Positions 1 through 54,410 of a stretch of 64,000 nucleotides of DNA are shown piece by piece; the stretch's first letter is position 1, and each line of letters opens with the position of its first letter. A program made the translations under genes and the position numbers. Source of the DNA: Amoeboaphelidium protococcarum X5 (Eukaryota; Fungi; Aphelidiomycota); contig JALDTO010000155.1 of NCBI GenBank assembly GCA_023515725.1, forward strand, positions 593,147-657,146, given 5' to 3'. The notes beneath the pieces were generated by a model. That model was not told the DNA's origin. It searched no databases and saw only the letters and a program-made list of their open reading frames with translations.

Positions 1-1150
1 AATAATATGCCAAGTTGGCAGAGGCAGCTTGATATGCCATGAACGCATTCACACTAAACTTCATACTGTCTTCATATCCACTTGTTTATTACTACTATTA
101 TTACTATTGGTGAGATGGCATCATTGAAATGTTCTACGCAGATGAAGACGCACTAAGACCGCCGCCATCAGCACCGCCAGACTTGTCTTTGCCCCACGCA
201 ACTTTCAACTTGGCGCCATTAAATGCCGCGTTGGCTAAGTAACAGATGGCCTATGCAGCATTCTCGTGACTGTCCATCTTGACGAATGCGTATCCCTTCT
301 CATGATGAATCTTAATATCCAGGATATGGCCATACGGAAGGAAAGCAGTTTGTAGCATCTCTGTAGTTGTATTAGGAGGAATACTAACGTACACGGTGGT
401 GACACTGGGCTAACTCTAATTCAGCACAGTATTCAAATTCAGTGTAGGCCTCTTAGGATGTTCAAATACAGGTGCAGTGGAATATGTACCAGTACTCGCG
501 GCACTCTAACCTTACTACGAAAACTACTACTACGGCTAAAATTACTACGCGCCATCCCCTTATTAAGGTTAACCAGAAGCATTAGAGCCAGCTTGTAGAT
601 TTGCTTTATTATGAGCCCAATTGATTTTGACACATCGCTAGCCAATCTGGCGACCGTTCATCATCTGAATGGCACGCTCAGCATCTCGCTTAGTCCTGAA
701 AGTCACAAATCCATATCCTCTAGTCTTGCCCGTCTACAGGTCCCACATTACACGCGCATCTGATAGAACACTCCCACCTAGAGCATCAGCGAACGCTCTA
801 GCCAGAACTTGATCATCAACATCGCCACTCAAATCGCCAACATAGAGAGAGTAATGACTCGAGATATCCTCCTTGCTCTTTGTAATCTGAATATACCACT
901 TCAACTGCACACTCAAATCATAGATGCGCCTTCCATTCAGCGTCAATATAGCCGTCTCTGCAGACTAATGATCTTTATACTCAATGTATGAGGTAGAGGT
1001 TGAGCCTGATGCGCGATCATGTATTGTCCTTATAGACACTATAGGGCCAGCGGTGGAGAAAATAGATGCCAACAGCTAATCAGTCACTCTTTAATCTAAA
1101 TTGCTGGCCTGTATAGTCGTTCGCCCAAAGCTATCTTGGATTTTTGGCAT
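1..1150 (-). CDS. PUB1: TIA-1/Pub1-like triple-RRM RNA-binding protein (3' end outside window)
   Basis: With TAR=Gln one frame runs from ATG 1150 (MPKIQDSFGRTTIQASNLDQRVTD). It contains RRM2 (YSLYVGDLSGDVDD...ARVMWD...KTRGYGFVTF), RRM3 (KGYAFVKM...KVAWGK) and a poly-Q tract of CAA/TAG/TAA codons near 87-110. Confidence 0.85.
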
Positions 1151-46529: not shown

Positions 46530-46850
46530 AATCTAGAATGCTTTGATATCTCAATATAAATATAATCTACTAAGTAATATAATCTTTAAAATAGCAATGA
46601 TATAATGATGCAAGATAGTATATGAAATACGTACAATGGTTGTTCTTTTTCGTGCGTGAATAAAAGAACAGTCGGCGCGGCGATCAAATGGTAGGAGAAT
46701 TTGAACTACGACGAGTGCTTGATCGGCAGGCTCATTTAAGAAGTAGAAGGGATTTGCGCTGGTTGAGAATATCTTTCAATAATCATACTAAAATATATAT
46801 ATGCTCAATTTATTATAAAACAAGACCATTATTTTCACTACTGACACGTA

Positions 46851-49229
46851 TCAGAGCAATGTGTCGATGCGAATGAGACCACTTCTGATGGAGGAAACGA
46901 TGAGCGTCTCATTGCCAACAGTGCAGAAACGCACCTGGGACACTTGGCACTCTTGAGGAACATACTCCGGTCTCACGGCAGTATTCTTCATATCAATCGA
47001 CCGTCTACTGCAATCGCCTTCAATGAACAGGATTCCTGAAGAGGGGAGCTGTGGATCGCTCATCATTGGCACCAGGTGGTACACATTTTGCATGAATGAT
47101 GGAACACGGTCGCGACTATGCACATTCCATGACTTGAGAACATTTGTAAATTTACTAAATCCAACTCGACCATCAGCAGACGCGTATACAACGAATGGTT
47201 CTCCTCCTTCAATAGACGTCACGTCGAAGCTGTGTACCTAACTCTAGTGTTGAGTAACTTTACCACTTCTGAAATGATCATTTTCGCTATTAGTGGCATT
47301 ACTTGCGGCAAAATTCATCAATTTTAGAGTGCAGTCATTCTAGGCATACATCAAAGAATCACATTAGGGCAACCACTAGACTTACGGGAGAAATCCTCTT
47401 GATCTTAATGCAACCAGACTGTGCGACATATCACAGATACTGGTGATTAGTATTCTGCCATCATAACCACATGAAACTATTTTGACATCTTGTTGTTCTT
47501 AAGCAGATTCTCTCACAACAGATAATGATGTGATGGAACATTCATGTATCAACGCACTCAGAACGACACTCAAAAAACCGCCATTCTCAGATTGATTAAA
47601 TAACCATATCCTGCCACAAGAATCACCAGCCACTAACGTATCTCCATCAATGCATTATATGGTAGTGAATTGGGAATCCACAGACTAATAATGAAATACA
47701 CTTTCCATCTTGACAGATTCTTCCGCTTGGAAAGATAATACCTAAATTAGATTATATGCAGCAAGCGAACCATCCTCAAATGATACCCATAATAAATTTG
47801 AAAAGAATTTCAAGCATAAGACACTGCCGTGATCTGTAACTAACGACAATATACAGCAAACTTGACCTGCACCGTTCAACCTCCATACTCTAATTACAGA
47901 TGGACCGCCCTTCTGGACACCAACAATCGGTTGATCGATAATAGATAAAGAGCCACCGCACGCTATAAACGTGCAACTAGTATCACTAACTTGGATCTGA
48001 AATATCTCCATTGCCAGAATAAGTCCACCGTTATTGATAATTGTACACTTGTTATCATTAAAAGTCAACAATTCACAATCTTCAGGGAATGATAACAGTT
48101 ATACTTCCTTGTCATCATTAGATACGCGAAATATCTCAAGCGGAAATTTCTAAAGTGCATACAAAGACCGCTACTCCTCAGAGAGACTAATAACATCTTT
48201 CTACGGATAAATAACAACCGCAGCAGTTGGCTCTTCTTAATTAATGCTATCCATACGCCAAGTAATCTGTCCAGAATTGTACGACGATCGTCCTCTATAT
48301 CTTTTACGAGTCTTAGTTGTGCGCTTATATTCATCCAAGGTGACTTATTCAGCATTTTTGAACTTGATATTAGCATATTGCAATACATCAAATCCCTACC
48401 AATAGTATGGAACATCCTTTAATTCGACTGTGGTAGACGCCCTTTAGAGATGGTCCATCATTTACTCACAATCCACAGAGTCAACTACAATTTACTACTA
48501 CTATTTCCCATGGATCAAAAGTGCTTCTAAAGAGTGATAAAACGTGTCAAAGTGATACTTGAGCGATGGTAATACTTTAAACTCTTTATCGCAGCCGGGT
48601 AGAGGACACTTGTACATGGCACCTGTTTGAGAAGCAGTACTCTTTCTACTCTTGTTCTTTTTAGGACGTCCTTTTTTTACTTTATCATTCGAATTAACTT
48701 CATCCTAGATATTTAACTACGCGTTATCAGTGCCATGCGAAGGCTTTACAGTTAGAATCTTTTCAAATTCTTGTACATTTACAGCAACTTTCGGTCCTTT
48801 ACGGGGTAGTTTGAGTTGCAACGAATTTGTATAATTTTCATACAGAGTGACCAGCGATTGCAGAGCCATTTGATCAACCATTAATTGTTATTCAGAGGAT
48901 AGTTACTGTACTTGAGGTGGGTTCTACTCTTCTGCTATGCTGATTTCACTATCGCTATCTTGCACAATGTCAGAATCCTGATCAGCTACATCTTGCTCAG
49001 ATGCCACAGAATGATCTTCGTTAGTGGATGACTGGTGATCGGGTAAATCTTCTTCCAATATGGCGTCTACAGCTTCCTACTGCTCGTGATCAGAAGTGAT
49101 TTAAAATTCTTCATCGTCACTGGGATTACTGTTAATTTCCAGTGACTTGTTGTCTTCATCACCATCTGATAATTATGGATAAGTGTCATAGTTGTAACTG
49201 ACACGCTTTCTAACGCGTTGGGGCCGCAT
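46851..49229 (-). CDS. TFIIIC WD40 subunit-like protein (GTF3C2/Tfc6-like)
   Basis: 792 aa with an acidic N-terminus, AT-hook KKGRPKK, C2H2-like YKCPLPGC...YH and WD40-like C-terminal repeats. Confidence 0.6.
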
Positions 49230-49311
49230 TTTTTTTAACTTTTGCCGTTTGATTTTGCAAGGAGAAAAAAGTTTAAGCCTGTGATTATTGACGCGTAACG
49301 CTCGTTAGTAC

Positions 49312-49530
49312 GGTAGAGTGGTTCGAACGTTTTGTTTCATAACTATCCATTTGAAACTCGGCGGAAATCCACTATTAAGGTCATTCCCTTCTTCTCATGC
49401 GCAAATGTGACCCTTTCATGTAATTCACCGCAGAATTCCTGCACGTTGCTGACAAGGCGAAGTAGGGGGCGTACCTTATTAATGAATTGTTGACTTCGAG
49501 ACTATATTCACCGAATGAAAAGACACTACC
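49312..49530 (-). ncRNA. Unassigned ~220-nt rod-like structured RNA candidate
   Basis: Nested stems 49312-20/49524-30, 49356-63/49509-16, 49366-81/49473-88 (15 of 16 pairs) and 49386-94/49459-67. G-U pairs form only on the minus strand. Confidence 0.5.
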
Positions 49531-49580
49531 AGGACTGAGAGTCGAGCAGAGACACCAACAGAAATAAAAGAAGATAAATA

Positions 49581-50231
49581 TATGTTAATAAGATAAATAC
49601 TCTATTAACACGTTAAGTGGAAGAAATCAATGTTCATAAGAGGCGCGCATATATACTGCAGATACTTGCTTATTCGAGATGTCAATGATGAAAAAGGTGC
49701 GAACTTGAAACAATGTTGATCATCTGCCCTTCAGAGTCAGCTATTGATACTTAGTTGCCGCGTCTCCCAACAATTCGTCAAGCTAAATATTACCGTTGGG
49801 TAGGGAGCGCCTTTGGTGTACTGGTAACATAGTATCCTTCCAAGATATTGCAGTGGGTTCGATTCCCGCAAGGCGCAATTTTTAATATTTTTGGTTAGCT
49901 ATGCTTAAGTTTTTCAGTTTGTGAGCCTACAATCACTTCTCTGGATATTTCCATCACAAAGCAATGTTAAACCGGATTTACTCTTTCCGCGAATCACGCC
50001 TCTTTTCCAGACATCACAAAGTCGCTCCTCGCGCGGTAATAATTTATCACTTGTACGGTAAGTACTACAGATTTTAACAATCCGAGAAACTAAGCGTAGC
50101 CTTGAAATAGAAACATTGGTGTATATTCTGTAAATTTTTGCATGCTTTATAACGCTATGTTAATAAGAAGTTACTCTATTAGTACGTTAAGTGGAAGAAA
50201 GTAATGTTCTTGAGCGGCGTACACTGCGGAT
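49581..50231 (+). repeat. Imperfect ~80-bp direct repeat (49581-49663 and 50156-50231) bracketing the tRNA
   Basis: Shared TATGTTAATAAGA...TACTCTATTA..ACGTTAAGTGGAAGAAA..AATGTTC, with a 17-bp identical core at 49610-26 and 50184-200. Confidence 0.8.
49807..49877 (+). tRNA. tRNA-Gly(TCC)
   Basis: Acceptor stem GCGCCTT/AAGGCGC, D arm, anticodon arm GTATC-CTTCCAA-GATAT, GGTTCGATTCC T loop, followed by a T-run. Confidence 0.95.
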
Positions 50232-52160
50232 GAGTTCATAAAGTGCTGCTGAGTGCACAAGAAAACCACCTTATCCTTGATTAATGGACTATTTTAGACA
50301 TAATCTGGCAAATACTCATAGATGCTTCATTCTGAATCATCCTGATCTAACTAGAGCTTGGTTGGACGGATTAAACCATCAAGATTAGCGTATTCTTACG
50401 GTGGAAGAAGTATAGACGTATCGAAAGCAACGCCATTAAAATGTAGCAATCACATGACTCTCTGTAACGTCTTGAATGGTATTTATGATGAGATCTATGC
50501 AATTGTTTCATAAATTCCAAAGCATAACAGATAAGGGGTAGTATATGGAGAAATAGTGCAATTCAGGGAGAATTGGCCAAGTTATCTGAGACTGATGCAT
50601 TTCCTCTAACAATATAATCTGGCACATGGTCTCGTCAAGTTCAATATTCTACCTGATGTGTCCTTAATGCCATTCCATATCAAGCTGAACAATCATTTGT
50701 GTTAATATACCAAGTGCTTCGGCAATAATTCAGAAGAGAGTCTCGATAGATTCAGAAATCTCCTAGATTTGCCTGATTGGTTTGAGGACCGTTTGATGCC
50801 TTAGCGCCTGACAGATCTGTACTCCATTAGCATTCCATACAAAGCGGGAAATCCAGTCGACACAGCTACAGAAGTATTAAATGATTAGTTTGGAGAAGAT
50901 TTCGCTGATTTACCAGGTACAGCTGGCTGGGATGAGGAAGATGTTCTGGGAGCTGATATAATTGATTTACCCGACGATGAGGAGCAGCAACGATAATAGC
51001 TGCTACATCTGGTAGTTGATGAAGAGAAGTTAGAAGCTGAAGCTGAAGGCGATAACCGATGGGACTGGCTTAATGATGCAGACTATTCATAAAGTAATAT
51101 CAACGAGTAGACAATCCTGAGAATAGGAGTCGACGTTGGTGTGATCAACTTTGCTGTGGCCATCCATGTGCGCGCTTCTTCAGATGCTAATGCTTTGCAA
51201 GTCCTATTGGCTACTAGACCAAGAGATTCAACAGTCGTATATCAGACTACTGCCGACTATTTCCATCGTCTGCATAGCGCTGTTGGCCCAAGAGCAAGTC
51301 TAATTAGAGATTAGTACTCTCTTCCTCGTCGCGGTGGTAACTTGCAGTAATTCTTATTAAAAGATGGTTCCTCTGCTGCTTTGACAGACGAAGGTATGAA
51401 TGTGTATTTGACTCTGGAGTACTAGCGTATGAAATTCCGCCACCATGTACAGATGTCTGGAATTTTAAAAACTATATGCTGCAAGCCCCTCCAATTTGAC
51501 ATTATTATGGATTCGATTGTCGGCAAAGACGCTAAAAGTAGCAGATTCTCATATAATATGCTGCGCAATAACATTTAGCGACCAACAGTGCTCCTTCAAA
51601 ATTATAATTCAGAAGTATCAATGATGATAGACCTCCACGAGAAAGGGTCATCGAACCATAGCCTCTACTGCGAGTAAACTTATCACAAAGTCGGCAAGGC
51701 CTCAAAGATACTCTGTTCCGAGATAATGTAATAATTAGTTCAACACTGTCGATCAGTAGATCTAACTCAAGAGCTAATAACTGTACAAAATGTGATCGAG
51801 AATATGAATAATATTTGGAAGGGCGAGAGCTAATTGTACTGCTTCTCAAGTGGCCTTTTCAGCTCTCTGTGACCAGCTAGTAGATTGACTGTAGCAAATA
51901 AATGATAGATGGATTATTGTGGACTGCATCATTAGTCTACTTCAAATCATCCGGTCTGCACGTAACAGCTCCGATCAATGGAAAGAAATTGACCATAGGA
52001 TTAGGAATGTCATAAAGTCGCAGTAGGCGACTAGCATGAAGATGACAAAGCGCCTCCTAGCTTATAGCAGAGGAGGCGCAACGCGAGTATTAATAATGAA
52101 ATCATGAGCGAATAGACTTTATTCGAGTGGTTAACTCAAATTTATTTAAAGTCTATTATC
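50230..52160 (+). mobile_element. Fanzor1/TnpB-like RuvC nuclease locus, partly decayed (main ORF 50454-51872)
   Basis: With TAR=Gln, motifs appear in Fanzor order: KFNILP...PFHIKL (~50640), TDLYSISI (~50811), RuvC-I IGVDVGVINFA (51123-51155), YQRMKFRHHV (~51420). RuvC-II/Zn-finger remnants follow; the ends carry TGA and frameshift damage. Confidence 0.65.
52050..52157 (+). ncRNA. Candidate omegaRNA scaffold: two hairpins 3' of the Fanzor-like ORF
   Basis: Perfect stems GCGCCTCCT/AGGAGGCGC (52050-58/52071-79) and AATAGACTTTA/TAAAGTCTATT (52111-21/52147-57), each with an inner stem. Confidence 0.45.
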
Positions 52161-52901
52161 GTCTTTATAACAAAGGAGATTAAACTCAACAACAGTGTCA
52201 TCAATAATCAATCGAGTGTGTGAGAAGTAGAAGAGATGCTGGAGTCTTCAGCGAAGAATTGAATTAGAAAAGGAAACTAAATCTACCATAGCTATCAGTG
52301 GTAGTAATAAAGGAGTCAAGAAGAATGGTAATTGGGTTGACAGCCATCAAACTGCGCTTCAAGCGGAATTTGAATGATGACGGCGATGGCAATGAATAGT
52401 AAGAAGAAAGAGAAAACGGTTGACTGTGGCGTGAAGCAAGTTGGATGCATAAAGAGCTATCCATGTTCTATTACTCGAAAAGAGACTGTGCTTACTGAAC
52501 CTCATCAAGACGGTCAGTTGATTCTTCCTCCTGCAACGGAGGGTGATTTAAATTAAGCTCGCTAATAGTATTCAGACGAACATTTAGTCTTTTGAATTAG
52601 TTACTAATGAAATTCATTAATTTCTTTAATCAGTAGTTAAACGATAGGAAGGATGAGGTTGGAAAAATTTTGATGGATACAGTCGACAGGAGAAGAAGCG
52701 TGAATGTTTGCCCACTAAATAATGATAACACGATCCGATTGAATTTAATTACTCTAATGCGAAGTACTACTCCCATTAAGAAGCCGAACATTCGCCTGAT
52801 AAATATAAGACATATTAAAAAGAGGAATATGCGAGTAGATAGACTCATTACTTCACTTTCATCTGCAGACATATAAACATCAACGAGCACCATGCATTAA
52901 G

Positions 52902-54080
52902 TCATTCATCATCTTCATCGCCACTTTCAGAGACCTCACTACTGTCTGATCCACCATGATCATTATCACTTTCACTACCATCAGTATCGCTATCACTACT
53001 ACCATCCTCACTATCATCCCCACCAACATAATCTTCATCTTCTTCAGAGTTGTAATCATCATCAACCGGTAGTATACTCCCACCACCAAAATCTTGGCCG
53101 CCAACTTGATCCATAGATAAACCACCAATTCTGAGTGCAGACTATTACGATGCAGACGCGTTCCTACTATCAAGAGACTTGTCCAAATCATGTTTATGAA
53201 TATACGCCATGATACCATCAAACTCTTCATACGCAATCATTCCGAACGTGAACACCTTCTCACTGGTATTGAGCACCCAGTCGAAAGTTCGGGATGTTAT
53301 ACCAGAAATTTCAACTGACTTGATTTAATTAAACGGCATATACAACACAGGCTTCTTGAATCCAAATAAAAGGCCAGTACTGAGCATGAATAAATGTCCT
53401 TCTTTGGCACCCAGATGGCATTGCATAAAAGAAGAATAGACATTCTTGCATACTTTGGACTTGAACTCTGATAAATCAGATTTGATAAGATTATACTTCA
53501 ACTCGTGTTAAAGCAGATTACATACAATCTCAACGTTACTTGATCCAAGCAGTGATTTGGCATTATGTACCACAATATCAGGCCGCTCATGAACAACTAC
53601 ACAAATGATGGAATCATCCGGTACGGTAACCTGATGGTTGTCCTCAGTCCGACTGATAAAAACCAACACACATGACTAGTCAGATTTAGATGGATTATGT
53701 AGACAGAATATCTATAAATGTTCTAATAGTGCTGCGATCTGAGTGCTGGTACCACATTATACAACGCGTACATCATTCGATGATATCAGCAAATCCACCT
53801 TCTTTCTAACTGGCAGCGTACAACTAAGATCCTTAATACGGATGTAATCGGACAAGTCTTTTATATTATCTTGTGGTTATTCCTCGCCTGGTATATATTT
53901 TCTCTTTTTACTCATACTTTTTTCAACGGAGCTATCATTACGCAGAGATTACTATTATGAGAGATAGTACCCATTCAAGCGACGCAATACATCAGTGCTT
54001 TATGGATAGTCTTTTATCAGAGATTAGATATCATCCTTAAGTTTCTAATCTTGAATTTAATCCAGCCAAGTGCTCTTCAT
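52902..54080 (-). CDS. RTT106: Histone chaperone Rtt106 (double PH, acidic tail)
   Basis: CHLGAKEGHLFMLSTGLLFGFKKPVLY...SGITSRTFD, EFDGIM and a long D/E tail. Alternative ATG at 54089. Confidence 0.85.
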
Positions 54081-54200
54081 AATTGTCATTTCCACTCGTA
54101 AATGTTTCAATAATATGCCACCGTCTCACTTGCTATAATTGTAATAGAGAAACAAAATGCTTTGTCTTTCTCATGCAGTCACAGTCAGCTCTTCAATGAA

Positions 54201-54341
54201 ACGCGTAAGGAGAAAGAGTGACAAAGCGAGCGTGCGTGTGAGAGAGAGTGAGAGAGATTGTGCGTGAGTGATAGAGAGACATTCAACTCACGCGTCTCAT
54301 CTGGTTGTTTGGGGAGATTCGCCTGTAACGAGAGAACGCGT
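54201..54341. promoter_or_regulatory. Three ACGCGT (MCB-like) sites with GA repeats upstream of RTT106
   Basis: ACGCGT at 54201, 54290 and 54336. Confidence 0.5.
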
Positions 54342-54410
54342 TTGAGGCTTTATTGCCCATACGCTATAGCTAATACTATGTTTATTAATTTGAAAATTTG
54401 CTGACGTATA

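What the first reader, a model, noticed from the sequence alone, without database searches (positions are those of the whole stretch)
50230..52200. Fanzor1/TnpB-like RNA-guided nuclease written in the host TAR=Gln code, missed by standard ORF calling
Seen: one plus-strand frame is open from 50346 to 51872 (ATG 50454, 472 aa) only when TAA/TAG are read as Gln; it is absent from the ORF track. It carries, in order, KFNILP..(P)FHIKL, TDLYSISI, an acidic insert, IGVDVGVINFA (Asp at 51132-34) and YQRMKFRHHV. Known: this order matches eukaryotic Fanzor1 (F..lP, TDG.svs, RuvC-I D.G, basic helix). RuvC-II/Zn-finger could be DLHEKGSS..C in the same frame, or the frameshifted IIFGRA...WIIVD and STSNHPVCTQQL at ~51808-51970. 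No clear RuvC-III RD.NA motif was found. Inference: a partly decayed Fanzor from a code-variant host. Its many TAR codons imply long residence, and intact relatives elsewhere in the genome would be missed by standard-code mining.
Basis: partly seen in the sequence, partly recalled or inferred. Interest (0 to 1): 0.9.

Follow-up and report, generated by a model that had tools for sequence, protein, structure and literature searches.

The report
Dead Fanzor nuclease gene in aphelid
This is a broken, non-functional leftover of a Fanzor (TnpB-like, RNA-guided DNA-cutting) transposon gene in the algal parasite Amoeboaphelidium protococcarum, readable only in that organism's TAA/TAG=Gln code; public databases already hold it as an unnamed protein, so it is an ordinary relic and not a hidden working nuclease.

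Summary
Frame 50346-51872 (+) has 19 TAA/TAG codons and no TGA, and every motif quoted is present, with the Asp at 51132-34. The host is Amoeboaphelidium protococcarum (MIR68 assembly), which reads TAR as Gln.

The ORF belongs to a species-restricted Fanzor-like family ("family B", at least 8 loci). Better-preserved members (C244, C179, C158, C235) score above Pfam's cut-off for PF07282 (TnpB/Cas12f TNB). They carry GVDxGV, IIVFWG, HEKGTSxHCxxCEQ...CxxC and N(G/R)DVNAAxNI.

The window copy is dead:
- The first zinc Cys is Ser.
- A 13-codon deletion removed the IVVFWG strand.
- No RuvC-III motif is found in any frame.
- One-base losses at about 50454 and 51679 put both ORF ends out of the ancestral frame.

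Three syntenic copies (C146, and two loci in strain MP228) carry their own frameshifts, stops or deletions. dN/dS against the closest ortholog is 1.01.

The gene is not hidden. It is already a public gene model of 425 aa, and its paralogs are "hypothetical proteins". Saito et al. 2023 list two A. occidentale Fanzors.

The scan had already found comparable dead Fanzor copies elsewhere in this genome (s1-558083, s1-559362). Verdict: a new member of a known kind, of low interest.

The parts
50346..51872 (+). Stop-to-stop frame that is open only when TAA/TAG are read as Gln (508 codons plus TGA)
50595..51872 (+). Existing public gene model of this ORF (P0015, 425 aa, starts MHFLQQY)
   Evidence: It sits on a contig of 1,152,983 bases, which is C155.
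50455..51678 (+). Core that is still in the ancestral reading frame and is homologous to family-B Fanzor-like proteins
   Evidence: BLASTP of P0015 against P0017 gives E 1e-16 and 9e-15. tblastn in code 6. The frame boundaries come from 1-nt differences shared by L053 and C146 and from the L039 N-terminal match.
50346..50454 (+). Head of the ORF, out of the ancestral frame after a 1-nt loss at about 50454; open by chance
   Evidence: C146 keeps the ancestral frame at least 58 residues further upstream.
50583..50840 (+). Conserved N-terminal block (YLRLMHFLQQY ... KFNILP ... PFHIKL ... TDLYSISIPY), 38-44% identical to paralogs
   Evidence: The language-model search gives a weak lead to DUF8286 clusters that co-occur with PF07282.
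50841..51056 (+). Acidic, low-complexity linker; paralogs carry a similar one of variable length
51123..51155 (+). RuvC-I motif IGVDVGVINFA; the Asp codon at 51132-51134 is retained
51510..51542 (+). Site of a net 13-codon deletion that removed the family's K-IVVFWG-GG strand. C146 still reads KIVVYVGRD here.
51633..51677 (+). LHEKGSSNHSLYCEQ, the remnant of the family motif HEKGTSxHCxxCEQ. The Glu is kept. The first zinc Cys is Ser, a change also seen in C146 and L053.
51679..51872 (+). Tail of the ORF, out of the ancestral frame after a 1-nt loss at about 51679. No second CxxC and no RuvC-III motif is detectable in any frame.
49807..49877 (+). tRNA-Gly(TCC) gene about 470 bp upstream of the ORF. 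It is context only; Fanzor-like loci in this genome lie near tRNA genes more often than chance predicts.

Best explanation
The ORF is a pseudogene. It is the fixed, immobile remnant of an old Fanzor (eukaryotic TnpB-like, OMEGA-type RNA-guided nuclease) element in Amoeboaphelidium protococcarum. The element inserted between a zf-C2H2 gene and an Rtt106-like gene, next to tRNA-Gly, before the two homeologous chromosome sets (C155 and C146) and the sequenced strains diverged. Its codons then drifted to the host's TAR/CAR mix. It lost its zinc-ribbon cysteine, a RuvC-core strand, the RuvC-III motif and any recognisable guide-RNA region. It now evolves neutrally. The long open frame in this strain is a leftover, partly fortuitous, and the product cannot be an RNA-guided nuclease. 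Shown here: homology, motif losses, synteny, independent frameshifts, and dN/dS of about 1. Inferred: that the ancestor was an active, RNA-guided, mobile Fanzor.
For: Homology: P0015 matches the PF07282-bearing paralog P0017 in two collinear stretches (E 1e-16 and 9e-15). It also matches C179, C158 and C212. Paralogs score 35-41 bits on PF07282 against a cut-off of 26.3 and end in CxxC...CxxC plus N(G/R)DVNAAxNI. The family-B profile matches the C-terminus of a classic Fanzor1-like 729-aa protein of the same genome (hhalign E 8e-5; BLASTP 1e-6 to 1e-7). The best PDB matches of that 729-aa protein are TnpB-like L79, Parasitella Fanzor1 and ISDra2 TnpB, all weak. The language-model search places P0015 nearest to clusters carrying PF07282 and DUF8286 (score 0.96).

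Decay: P0015 has no Pfam hit. The family HMM aligns it only up to position 113 of 150, and no RuvC-III motif is found in any frame. The first zinc Cys is Ser, and 13 codons are deleted.

Synteny: four copies share the same neighbouring genes. C146 has two in-frame TGA codons, a frameshift and an 883-bp deletion. L054 is 96.7% identical and has changes of -1, +1, -1 and -5 nt inside the core. Independent short-read contigs confirm the +1 and -5 changes.

Selection: dN/dS against L054 is 1.01; the neighbouring genes give about 0.2. Relative rates at conserved sites are 11 versus 16, not significantly different.

Residence: TAR usage matches the host's.
Against: The frame is still open for 508 codons, with 75 codons one mutation away from TGA. 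dN/dS against the more distant copies is below 1: 0.51 against L053 and 0.58 against C146, falling to about 0.3 in the N-terminal block. So the gene, or its N-terminal part, was under constraint for part of the time since the copies split. Contigs of runs X9 and X16, whose molecule type is unknown, cover parts of the locus at low depth, so weak transcription is not excluded. Structure prediction failed (pLDDT 36-40), so there is no fold-level confirmation. The family-B profile finds no PDB chain.
Confidence: 0.86

Rival explanations
1. It is a domesticated, nuclease-dead Fanzor derivative. On this reading the protein, or at least its N-terminal and RuvC-I part, has been kept by the host for a new role such as RNA- or DNA-binding or regulation, as TldR proteins derive from TnpB in bacteria.
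For: The frame is open over 508 codons in this strain. dN/dS is 0.3 in the N-terminal block against L053 and C146. The locus is retained at the same place in all four copies. A public gene model exists.
Against: The closest ortholog, L054, is frameshifted four times inside the core, and dN/dS against it is 1.01. C146 has in-frame TGA codons and has lost its 3' end. The ends of the window ORF are out of the ancestral frame. Relative rates show no asymmetry. There is no conserved downstream RNA.
Confidence: 0.07
2. It is still an active, unusual RNA-guided nuclease whose active site and zinc site are built differently.
For: The RuvC-I Asp and the HEKG Glu are retained.
Against: No RuvC-III Asp motif is found in any frame. 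One zinc Cys is lost and the second CxxC cannot be aligned. A core beta-strand is deleted. The locus lacks the roughly 430-nt conserved downstream block that intact paralogs carry. The locus is single-copy apart from its syntenic counterparts.
Confidence: 0.02
3. It is not a Fanzor at all. It would be another RNase H-fold protein (a Ydc2 or poxvirus-type Holliday junction resolvase) or a chance open frame.
For: P0015 itself has no Pfam or PDB sequence hit. The AF2 models are unusable.
Against: There is significant collinear homology over about 400 residues to proteins with PF07282 above the cut-off. No hit to any resolvase family appears even at E up to 10. The chance of a TGA-free frame of this length is about e^-17.
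Confidence: 0.02

Closest known systems
Fanzor1 nucleases (e.g. Spizellomyces punctatus SpuFz1, Parasitella parasitica Fz1; Saito et al. 2023, PMC10432273)
   Same: Eukaryotic TnpB homologs. The family B to which this ORF belongs has the same order of elements: a RuvC-I GxDxG motif, a helical insert, a G-rich strand (IIVFWGTGG here, IIAYGAGNF in the classic family-A copies), an ExxTS motif followed by a CxxC...CxxC TNB ribbon (PF07282), and a (R/G)DxNAAxNI RuvC-III. Intact members carry a conserved non-coding block just downstream, where Fanzor guide RNAs are encoded.
   Different: The window copy lacks the zinc ribbon, the G-rich strand, RuvC-III and the downstream block. By sequence, family B is confined to A. 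protococcarum: 10 real hits among 1.84 billion representatives. It finds no solved Fanzor or TnpB by profile. Its placement in the Fanzor1 or Fanzor2 clade was not determined.
The 729-aa Fanzor1-like 'family A' of the same genome (L023-L026)
   Same: Same host and same code. The C-terminal RuvC-II, TNB and RuvC-III region is related (hhalign E 8e-5).
   Different: Family A copies are 98.5-99.7% identical to one another, intact and multi-copy. TAR makes up only 23-26% of their Gln codons, against 55% in the host, so they look young. The window ORF is old, effectively single-copy and broken. No N-terminal similarity was detected.
Bacterial TnpB (ISDra2) / Cas12f TNB domain, Pfam PF07282
   Same: The paralogs of this ORF match PF07282 above the gathering score.
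   Different: The window ORF does not match it. The host is a eukaryote. The proteins have a long N-terminal extension and an acidic linker.
TldR, nuclease-dead TnpB-derived regulators (bioRxiv 10.1101/2023.11.30.569447)
   Same: A TnpB-family protein that has lost nuclease motifs while keeping an open frame.
   Different: TldR proteins are conserved and under selection, and they keep a guide RNA. Here the orthologs are frameshifted, dN/dS is about 1, and no RNA block is conserved.

Membership tests
Fanzor/TnpB (OMEGA) nuclease superfamily | Sequence homology to proteins carrying the TnpB/Cas12f TNB domain (PF07282) | tested here: met
   P0015 against P0017 (PF07282, 35.2 bits): E 1e-16 and 9e-15, collinear. 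The search for homologous proteins lists P0017 at E 1e-27. tblastn to C179, C158 and C212.
Fanzor/TnpB (OMEGA) nuclease superfamily | The protein's own match to PF07282 (zinc ribbon CxxC...CxxC) | tested here: not met
   There is no Pfam hit, either for the pieces or for P0015 as a whole. None of the 41 genome hits lies in the window. The first Cys is Ser (NHSLYC) and the second pair cannot be aligned.
Fanzor/TnpB (OMEGA) nuclease superfamily | RuvC-I catalytic Asp in a (I/V)GxDxG strand | tested here: met
   IGVDVGV is present with GAC at 51132-34. It aligns to VGVD(L/V)GV of the paralogs.
Fanzor/TnpB (OMEGA) nuclease superfamily | RuvC-II catalytic Glu | tested here: inconclusive
   The Glu of HEKG is kept. 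It aligns with PEYRTS of family A. That this Glu is the catalytic, 'rearranged' one is an inference from published Fanzor descriptions and was not tested. The preceding IVVFWG strand is deleted.
Fanzor/TnpB (OMEGA) nuclease superfamily | RuvC-III motif (R/G)DxNAAxNI | tested here: not met
   Neither the tblastn search nor the six-frame HMM search finds it in the window or in C146.
Fanzor/TnpB (OMEGA) nuclease superfamily | Conserved guide-RNA (omega RNA) region at or after the 3' end of the gene | tested here: not met
   C179, C235 and C244 share a downstream block of about 430 nt at more than 90% identity. An nhmmer profile of that block finds nothing in the window, in C146 or downstream of C212.
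Fanzor/TnpB (OMEGA) nuclease superfamily | Mobility: several copies at different sites, with element ends and an empty site | tested here: not met
   The only DNA-level copies are syntenic counterparts. No empty site is available.
Fanzor/TnpB (OMEGA) nuclease superfamily | RuvC/TnpB fold | tested here: inconclusive
   The AF2 models of P0017 and P0015 have pLDDT 40 and 36.5, which is too low for a fold search.
Fanzor1 clade specifically | Phylogenetic placement with Fanzor1, and the Fanzor1-type N-terminal domain | tested here: inconclusive
   The C-terminus is related to the Fanzor1-like family A. The N-terminus shows no profile similarity. There is only a weak language-model lead to DUF8286. 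No tree was built.
Holliday junction resolvases (Ydc2 / poxvirus RuvC-like) | Match to a resolvase family profile | tested here: not met
   No such Pfam family matches P0015, P0016 or P0017, even at E up to 10.

The most novel reading that the evidence does not exclude
The relic is one trace of an aphelid-specific Fanzor clade that settled preferentially next to tRNA genes, here 470 bp from tRNA-Gly. Either its carrier transposon or its RNA-guided homing would have targeted Pol III loci. The N-terminal half of this copy (dN/dS about 0.3 against older copies) could have been kept for a time for a non-nuclease role.
Probability: 0.15. Interest if true: 0.6.

Novelty: new member of a known kind. 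Interest (0 to 1): 0.22.

Why it matters
On its own it matters little. It is one more dead transposon gene, already deposited as a hypothetical protein. Its value is as context in three ways. First, it helps show that A. protococcarum, which reads TAA/TAG as Gln, carries dozens of Fanzor loci of very different ages. The old ones have fully adopted the host's TAR codons and the young 729-aa ones have not, which gives a natural clock for how long a transposon has resided after a code change. Second, the old family is so diverged that profile searches of solved TnpB and Fanzor structures miss it, so clade-specific profiles are needed for a census. Third, it adds a data point to the tRNA-proximal placement of Fanzor relics in this compact genome.

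Tried and rejected
- Pfam on the ten stop-free pieces and on the whole P0015 found nothing.
- PF01385 (OrfB_IS605) has no hit anywhere in the genome.
- PDB sequence searches gave little. Family-A and family-B pieces produced only weak hits (E 0.1-1.3). The family-B profile produced none.
- AlphaFold2 on P0017 and P0015, each with 14-15-row alignments, gave pLDDT 40 and 36.5. I ran no fold search because matches to such models would be meaningless.
- I searched for the missing zinc ribbon and RuvC-III in other frames and after the 883-bp segment. Nothing was found.
- I first read the 883-bp segment 51744-52626 as an insertion that had broken the gene. I rejected this: both MP228 loci and contigs of X5 and X6 contain it, so C146 lost it, between 13-15-bp direct repeats.
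- I considered the 165-bp repeat downstream as a possible guide RNA. I rejected this: it has a 10-bp terminal inverted repeat and 5-bp target duplications, empty sites exist in other strains, and no copy lies next to a Fanzor gene.
- An nhmmer profile of the paralogs' downstream block finds no hit near the focal gene.
- PF26935 (DUF8286) is not in the local Pfam copy.
- The expression test was inconclusive. Only contigs were available and no run is on record as RNA.
Full report
**1. Observation.**
With TGA as the only stop, the + frame 50346-51872 is open for 508 codons. It contains 11 TAA and 8 TAG. The two other + frames hold 17 TGA each over the same span. Under the standard code the longest + ORF here is 57 aa.

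The code is the host's own. The window holds TGA-only ORFs of up to 1421 aa, but only two ORFs of 200 aa or more under the standard code. TAR supplies 55% of Gln codons in 14 host ORFs and 59% in this ORF. At the ORF's TAR positions its paralogs carry Gln five times more often than background.

**2. Organism and public status.**
Protein look-ups name the source as Amoeboaphelidium protococcarum. Locus tags beginning MIR68_ belong to this assembly and tags beginning MP228_ to a second strain. The focal ORF is already a called gene: P0015, 425 aa, running from ATG 50595 to 51872. Its homeolog is 'hypothetical protein MIR68_003175' (P0016). So the gene was hidden only from a standard-code ORF track. 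Saito et al. 2023 (PMC10432273, supplement file 3) list two Fanzors from A. occidentale. No paper in the library mentions both Fanzor and Amoeboaphelidium in its main text.

**3. What family it belongs to.**
- *PF07282 in the genome.* The genome has 41 six-frame matches to PF07282 (Cas12f1-like TNB). Thirty-six are over the cut-off and many contain TAA/TAG. None lies in the window.
- *Homology to paralogs.* Translated in code 6, the focal ORF is significantly and collinearly similar to ORFs at several of those loci and others: C179, C158, C244, C212, C235, C249, C57 and C207. I call this set family B. With stored proteins, P0015 against P0017 (C244, 625 aa) gives E 1e-16 and 9e-15.
- *Domain and motifs.* Family-B proteins score 35-41 bits on PF07282 against a cut-off of 26.3. 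Their motifs run in this order: YLRLxxFLQQY, FNxxP, PFHxxL, TDLYSxSxP, an acidic linker, WLNxxxxPQ, (V/I)GVDxGV, ALQVL, IIVFWG(T/S)GG, HEKGTSxHCxxCEQ, CxxCH and N(G/R)DVNAAxNI.
- *Link to classic Fanzors.* The family-B profile matches the C-terminal piece of a 729-aa Fanzor1-like protein of the same genome ('family A', with motifs IIAYGAGNF, PEYRTSQRCSNC and WHRDVNAARNI). hhalign gives E 8e-5 and BLASTP gives 1e-6 to 1e-7. That family-A piece has TnpB-like L79, Parasitella Fanzor1 and ISDra2 TnpB as its best, though weak, PDB matches.
- *Language-model lead.* The search puts P0015 nearest to clusters carrying PF07282 and DUF8286, from giant viruses and from Mucoromycota and Zoopagomycota fungi (score 0.96). 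This is weak but independent support.
- *Distribution.* Family B is narrowly distributed. A profile of its RuvC-I region, searched against 1.84 billion representatives, found 10 real hits. The six I looked up are all from A. protococcarum and the other four match loci of this genome by sequence. Word-based searches agree.

**4. State of this copy.**
- *Retained:* the RuvC-I Asp and the Glu of HEKG.
- *Lost:* the first zinc Cys is now Ser, a change shared with C146 and L053 and therefore old. A net 13 codons including the IVVFWG strand are deleted; C146 still has KIVVYVGRD there. The second CxxC and the RuvC-III motif are gone. The family HMM aligns only to position 113 of 150, and nothing is found in any frame of the window or of C146.
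- *Longer ancestor.* The ancestral protein was longer at its N-terminus. L039, L046 and L048 extend about 150 residues further, and C146 keeps that frame for at least 58 more residues than the window.
- *Frame shifts.* One-base differences at about 50454 and about 51679 are shared by L053 and C146 but not by the window or L054. So the window lineage lost a base at each place. Only 50455-51678 is in the ancestral frame, and the head and tail of the ORF are open by chance.

**5. Synteny and selection.**
- *Four syntenic copies.* The locus exists in four copies with the same neighbours, a zf-C2H2 gene on one side and an Rtt106-like gene on the other: the window (C155), C146 (84% identical), MP228 L054 (96.7-97.5%) and MP228 L053 (about 91-94%). 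These are therefore homeologs or orthologs, not transposed copies. The insertion predates their divergence.
- *Each is broken differently.* C146 has two in-frame TGA codons, a frameshift at 51607 and an 883-bp deletion that removes the 3' end. L054 has changes of -1, +1, -1 and -5 nt inside the core. Independent short-read contigs of run X6 confirm the +1 and -5 changes. L053 has its own frameshift after LYCE.
- *dN/dS.* It is 1.01 against L054, 0.51 against L053 and 0.58 against C146. The two flanking genes give about 0.2. The N-terminal block gives about 0.3 against the older copies, so constraint probably lasted for a while after the copies split.
- *Relative rates.* A relative-rate count at conserved sites gives 11 changes on the window branch and 16 on the C146 branch. 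This shows no special constraint on the window copy.

**6. Mechanism.**
The best reading is a dead relic of a once RNA-guided nuclease gene, evolving neutrally. The better-preserved paralogs C179, C235 and C244 carry, from about +100 to +530 after the stop codon, a block that is more than 90% identical. That is more conserved than their coding sequence (72-79%), and it ends sharply. This is the expected signature of a guide-RNA scaffold ending at the element boundary. Nothing like it is found near the focal gene. Expression could not be settled: only contigs were available, and low-depth pieces from runs of unknown molecule type cover parts of the locus.

**7. Limits.**
The structure predictions were unusable, so the fold was not confirmed. 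The Fanzor1-versus-Fanzor2 placement and the N-terminal motif analogy (F..lP, TDG) are unsupported.

**8. Verdict.**
The object is an ordinary, already-deposited pseudogene of a known kind. Earlier follow-ups in this scan reported similar dead Fanzor copies elsewhere in the genome, along with their tRNA proximity and long downstream RNA. I re-tested those points only in part.

Noticed in passing
window 52008-52172: A 165-bp mobile element lies 135 bp after the ORF's stop codon. It has a 10-bp terminal inverted repeat (TGTCATAAAG ... CTTTATAACA, i.e. TG...CA ends). At least 15 copies in the genome are 80-96% identical, and most have clean 5-bp target duplications. Empty sites exist in both MP228 loci and in contigs of two other samples. 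It looks like a MITE or a solo LTR and is unrelated to the Fanzor gene. The duplication in the window copy is imperfect (AGGAA versus AAGGA).
   Followed up: partly
L029 5200-5630; L048 about 2080-2510; L046 about 640-1065 (minus strand): Family-B copies C179, C235 and C244 share a non-coding block of about 430 nt, starting about 100 nt after the stop codon. It is more than 90% identical, whereas their coding sequences are only 72-79% identical, and the similarity ends abruptly. It is a candidate long omega-RNA scaffold plus right end of the element. In C158 the block is split by an insertion of about 860 bp.
   Followed up: partly
L023 2885-5074, L024 2929-5118 (-), L025 2924-5113 (-), L026 2886-5075: Intact 729-aa Fanzor1-like genes, 98.5-99.7% identical to one another, sit at four or more loci. 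TAR supplies only 23-26% of their Gln codons, against 55% in host genes. This suggests a young, recently active family that has not yet drifted to the host's codon mix.
   Followed up: partly
genome-wide; window 49807-49877 (tRNA-Gly), L039 216-287, L040 2844-2915, L034 2042-2125 and 6620-6700: Fanzor-like loci lie near tRNA genes more often than chance predicts. Of the 63 tRNA genes scored, 8 lie within 3 kb of a Fanzor-like hit, against 0.77 expected (Poisson P about 1.5e-6). Homeologous pairs inflate the count. The orientation relative to the tRNA is not uniform.
   Followed up: partly
window 49581-49645 and 50156-50219: A 65-bp direct repeat brackets the tRNA-Gly gene. Region 50104-50305 has 3-6 times the contig depth of its flanks in two samples. 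X6 contigs join 50219 back to about 49703. This points to a repeated or tandemly duplicated unit. In C146 the two repeat copies lie 5.7 kb apart, around an extra 5.2-kb segment.
   Followed up: no
window 51744-52626 versus G000:C146:453697-453711: C146 lacks this 883-bp segment. The junction lies in a 13-15-bp direct repeat (TAATCAGTAGTT-like) that is present at both ends of the segment in the window. Both MP228 loci keep the segment, so this is a repeat-mediated deletion in C146.
   Followed up: yes
window 46632-54396 versus G000:C146:451971-463992: The whole neighbourhood is duplicated on another contig at 84-88% identity. PF07282 hits across the genome also come in matched pairs. Both facts fit a hybrid or duplicated genome with two diverged chromosome sets.
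   Followed up: partly
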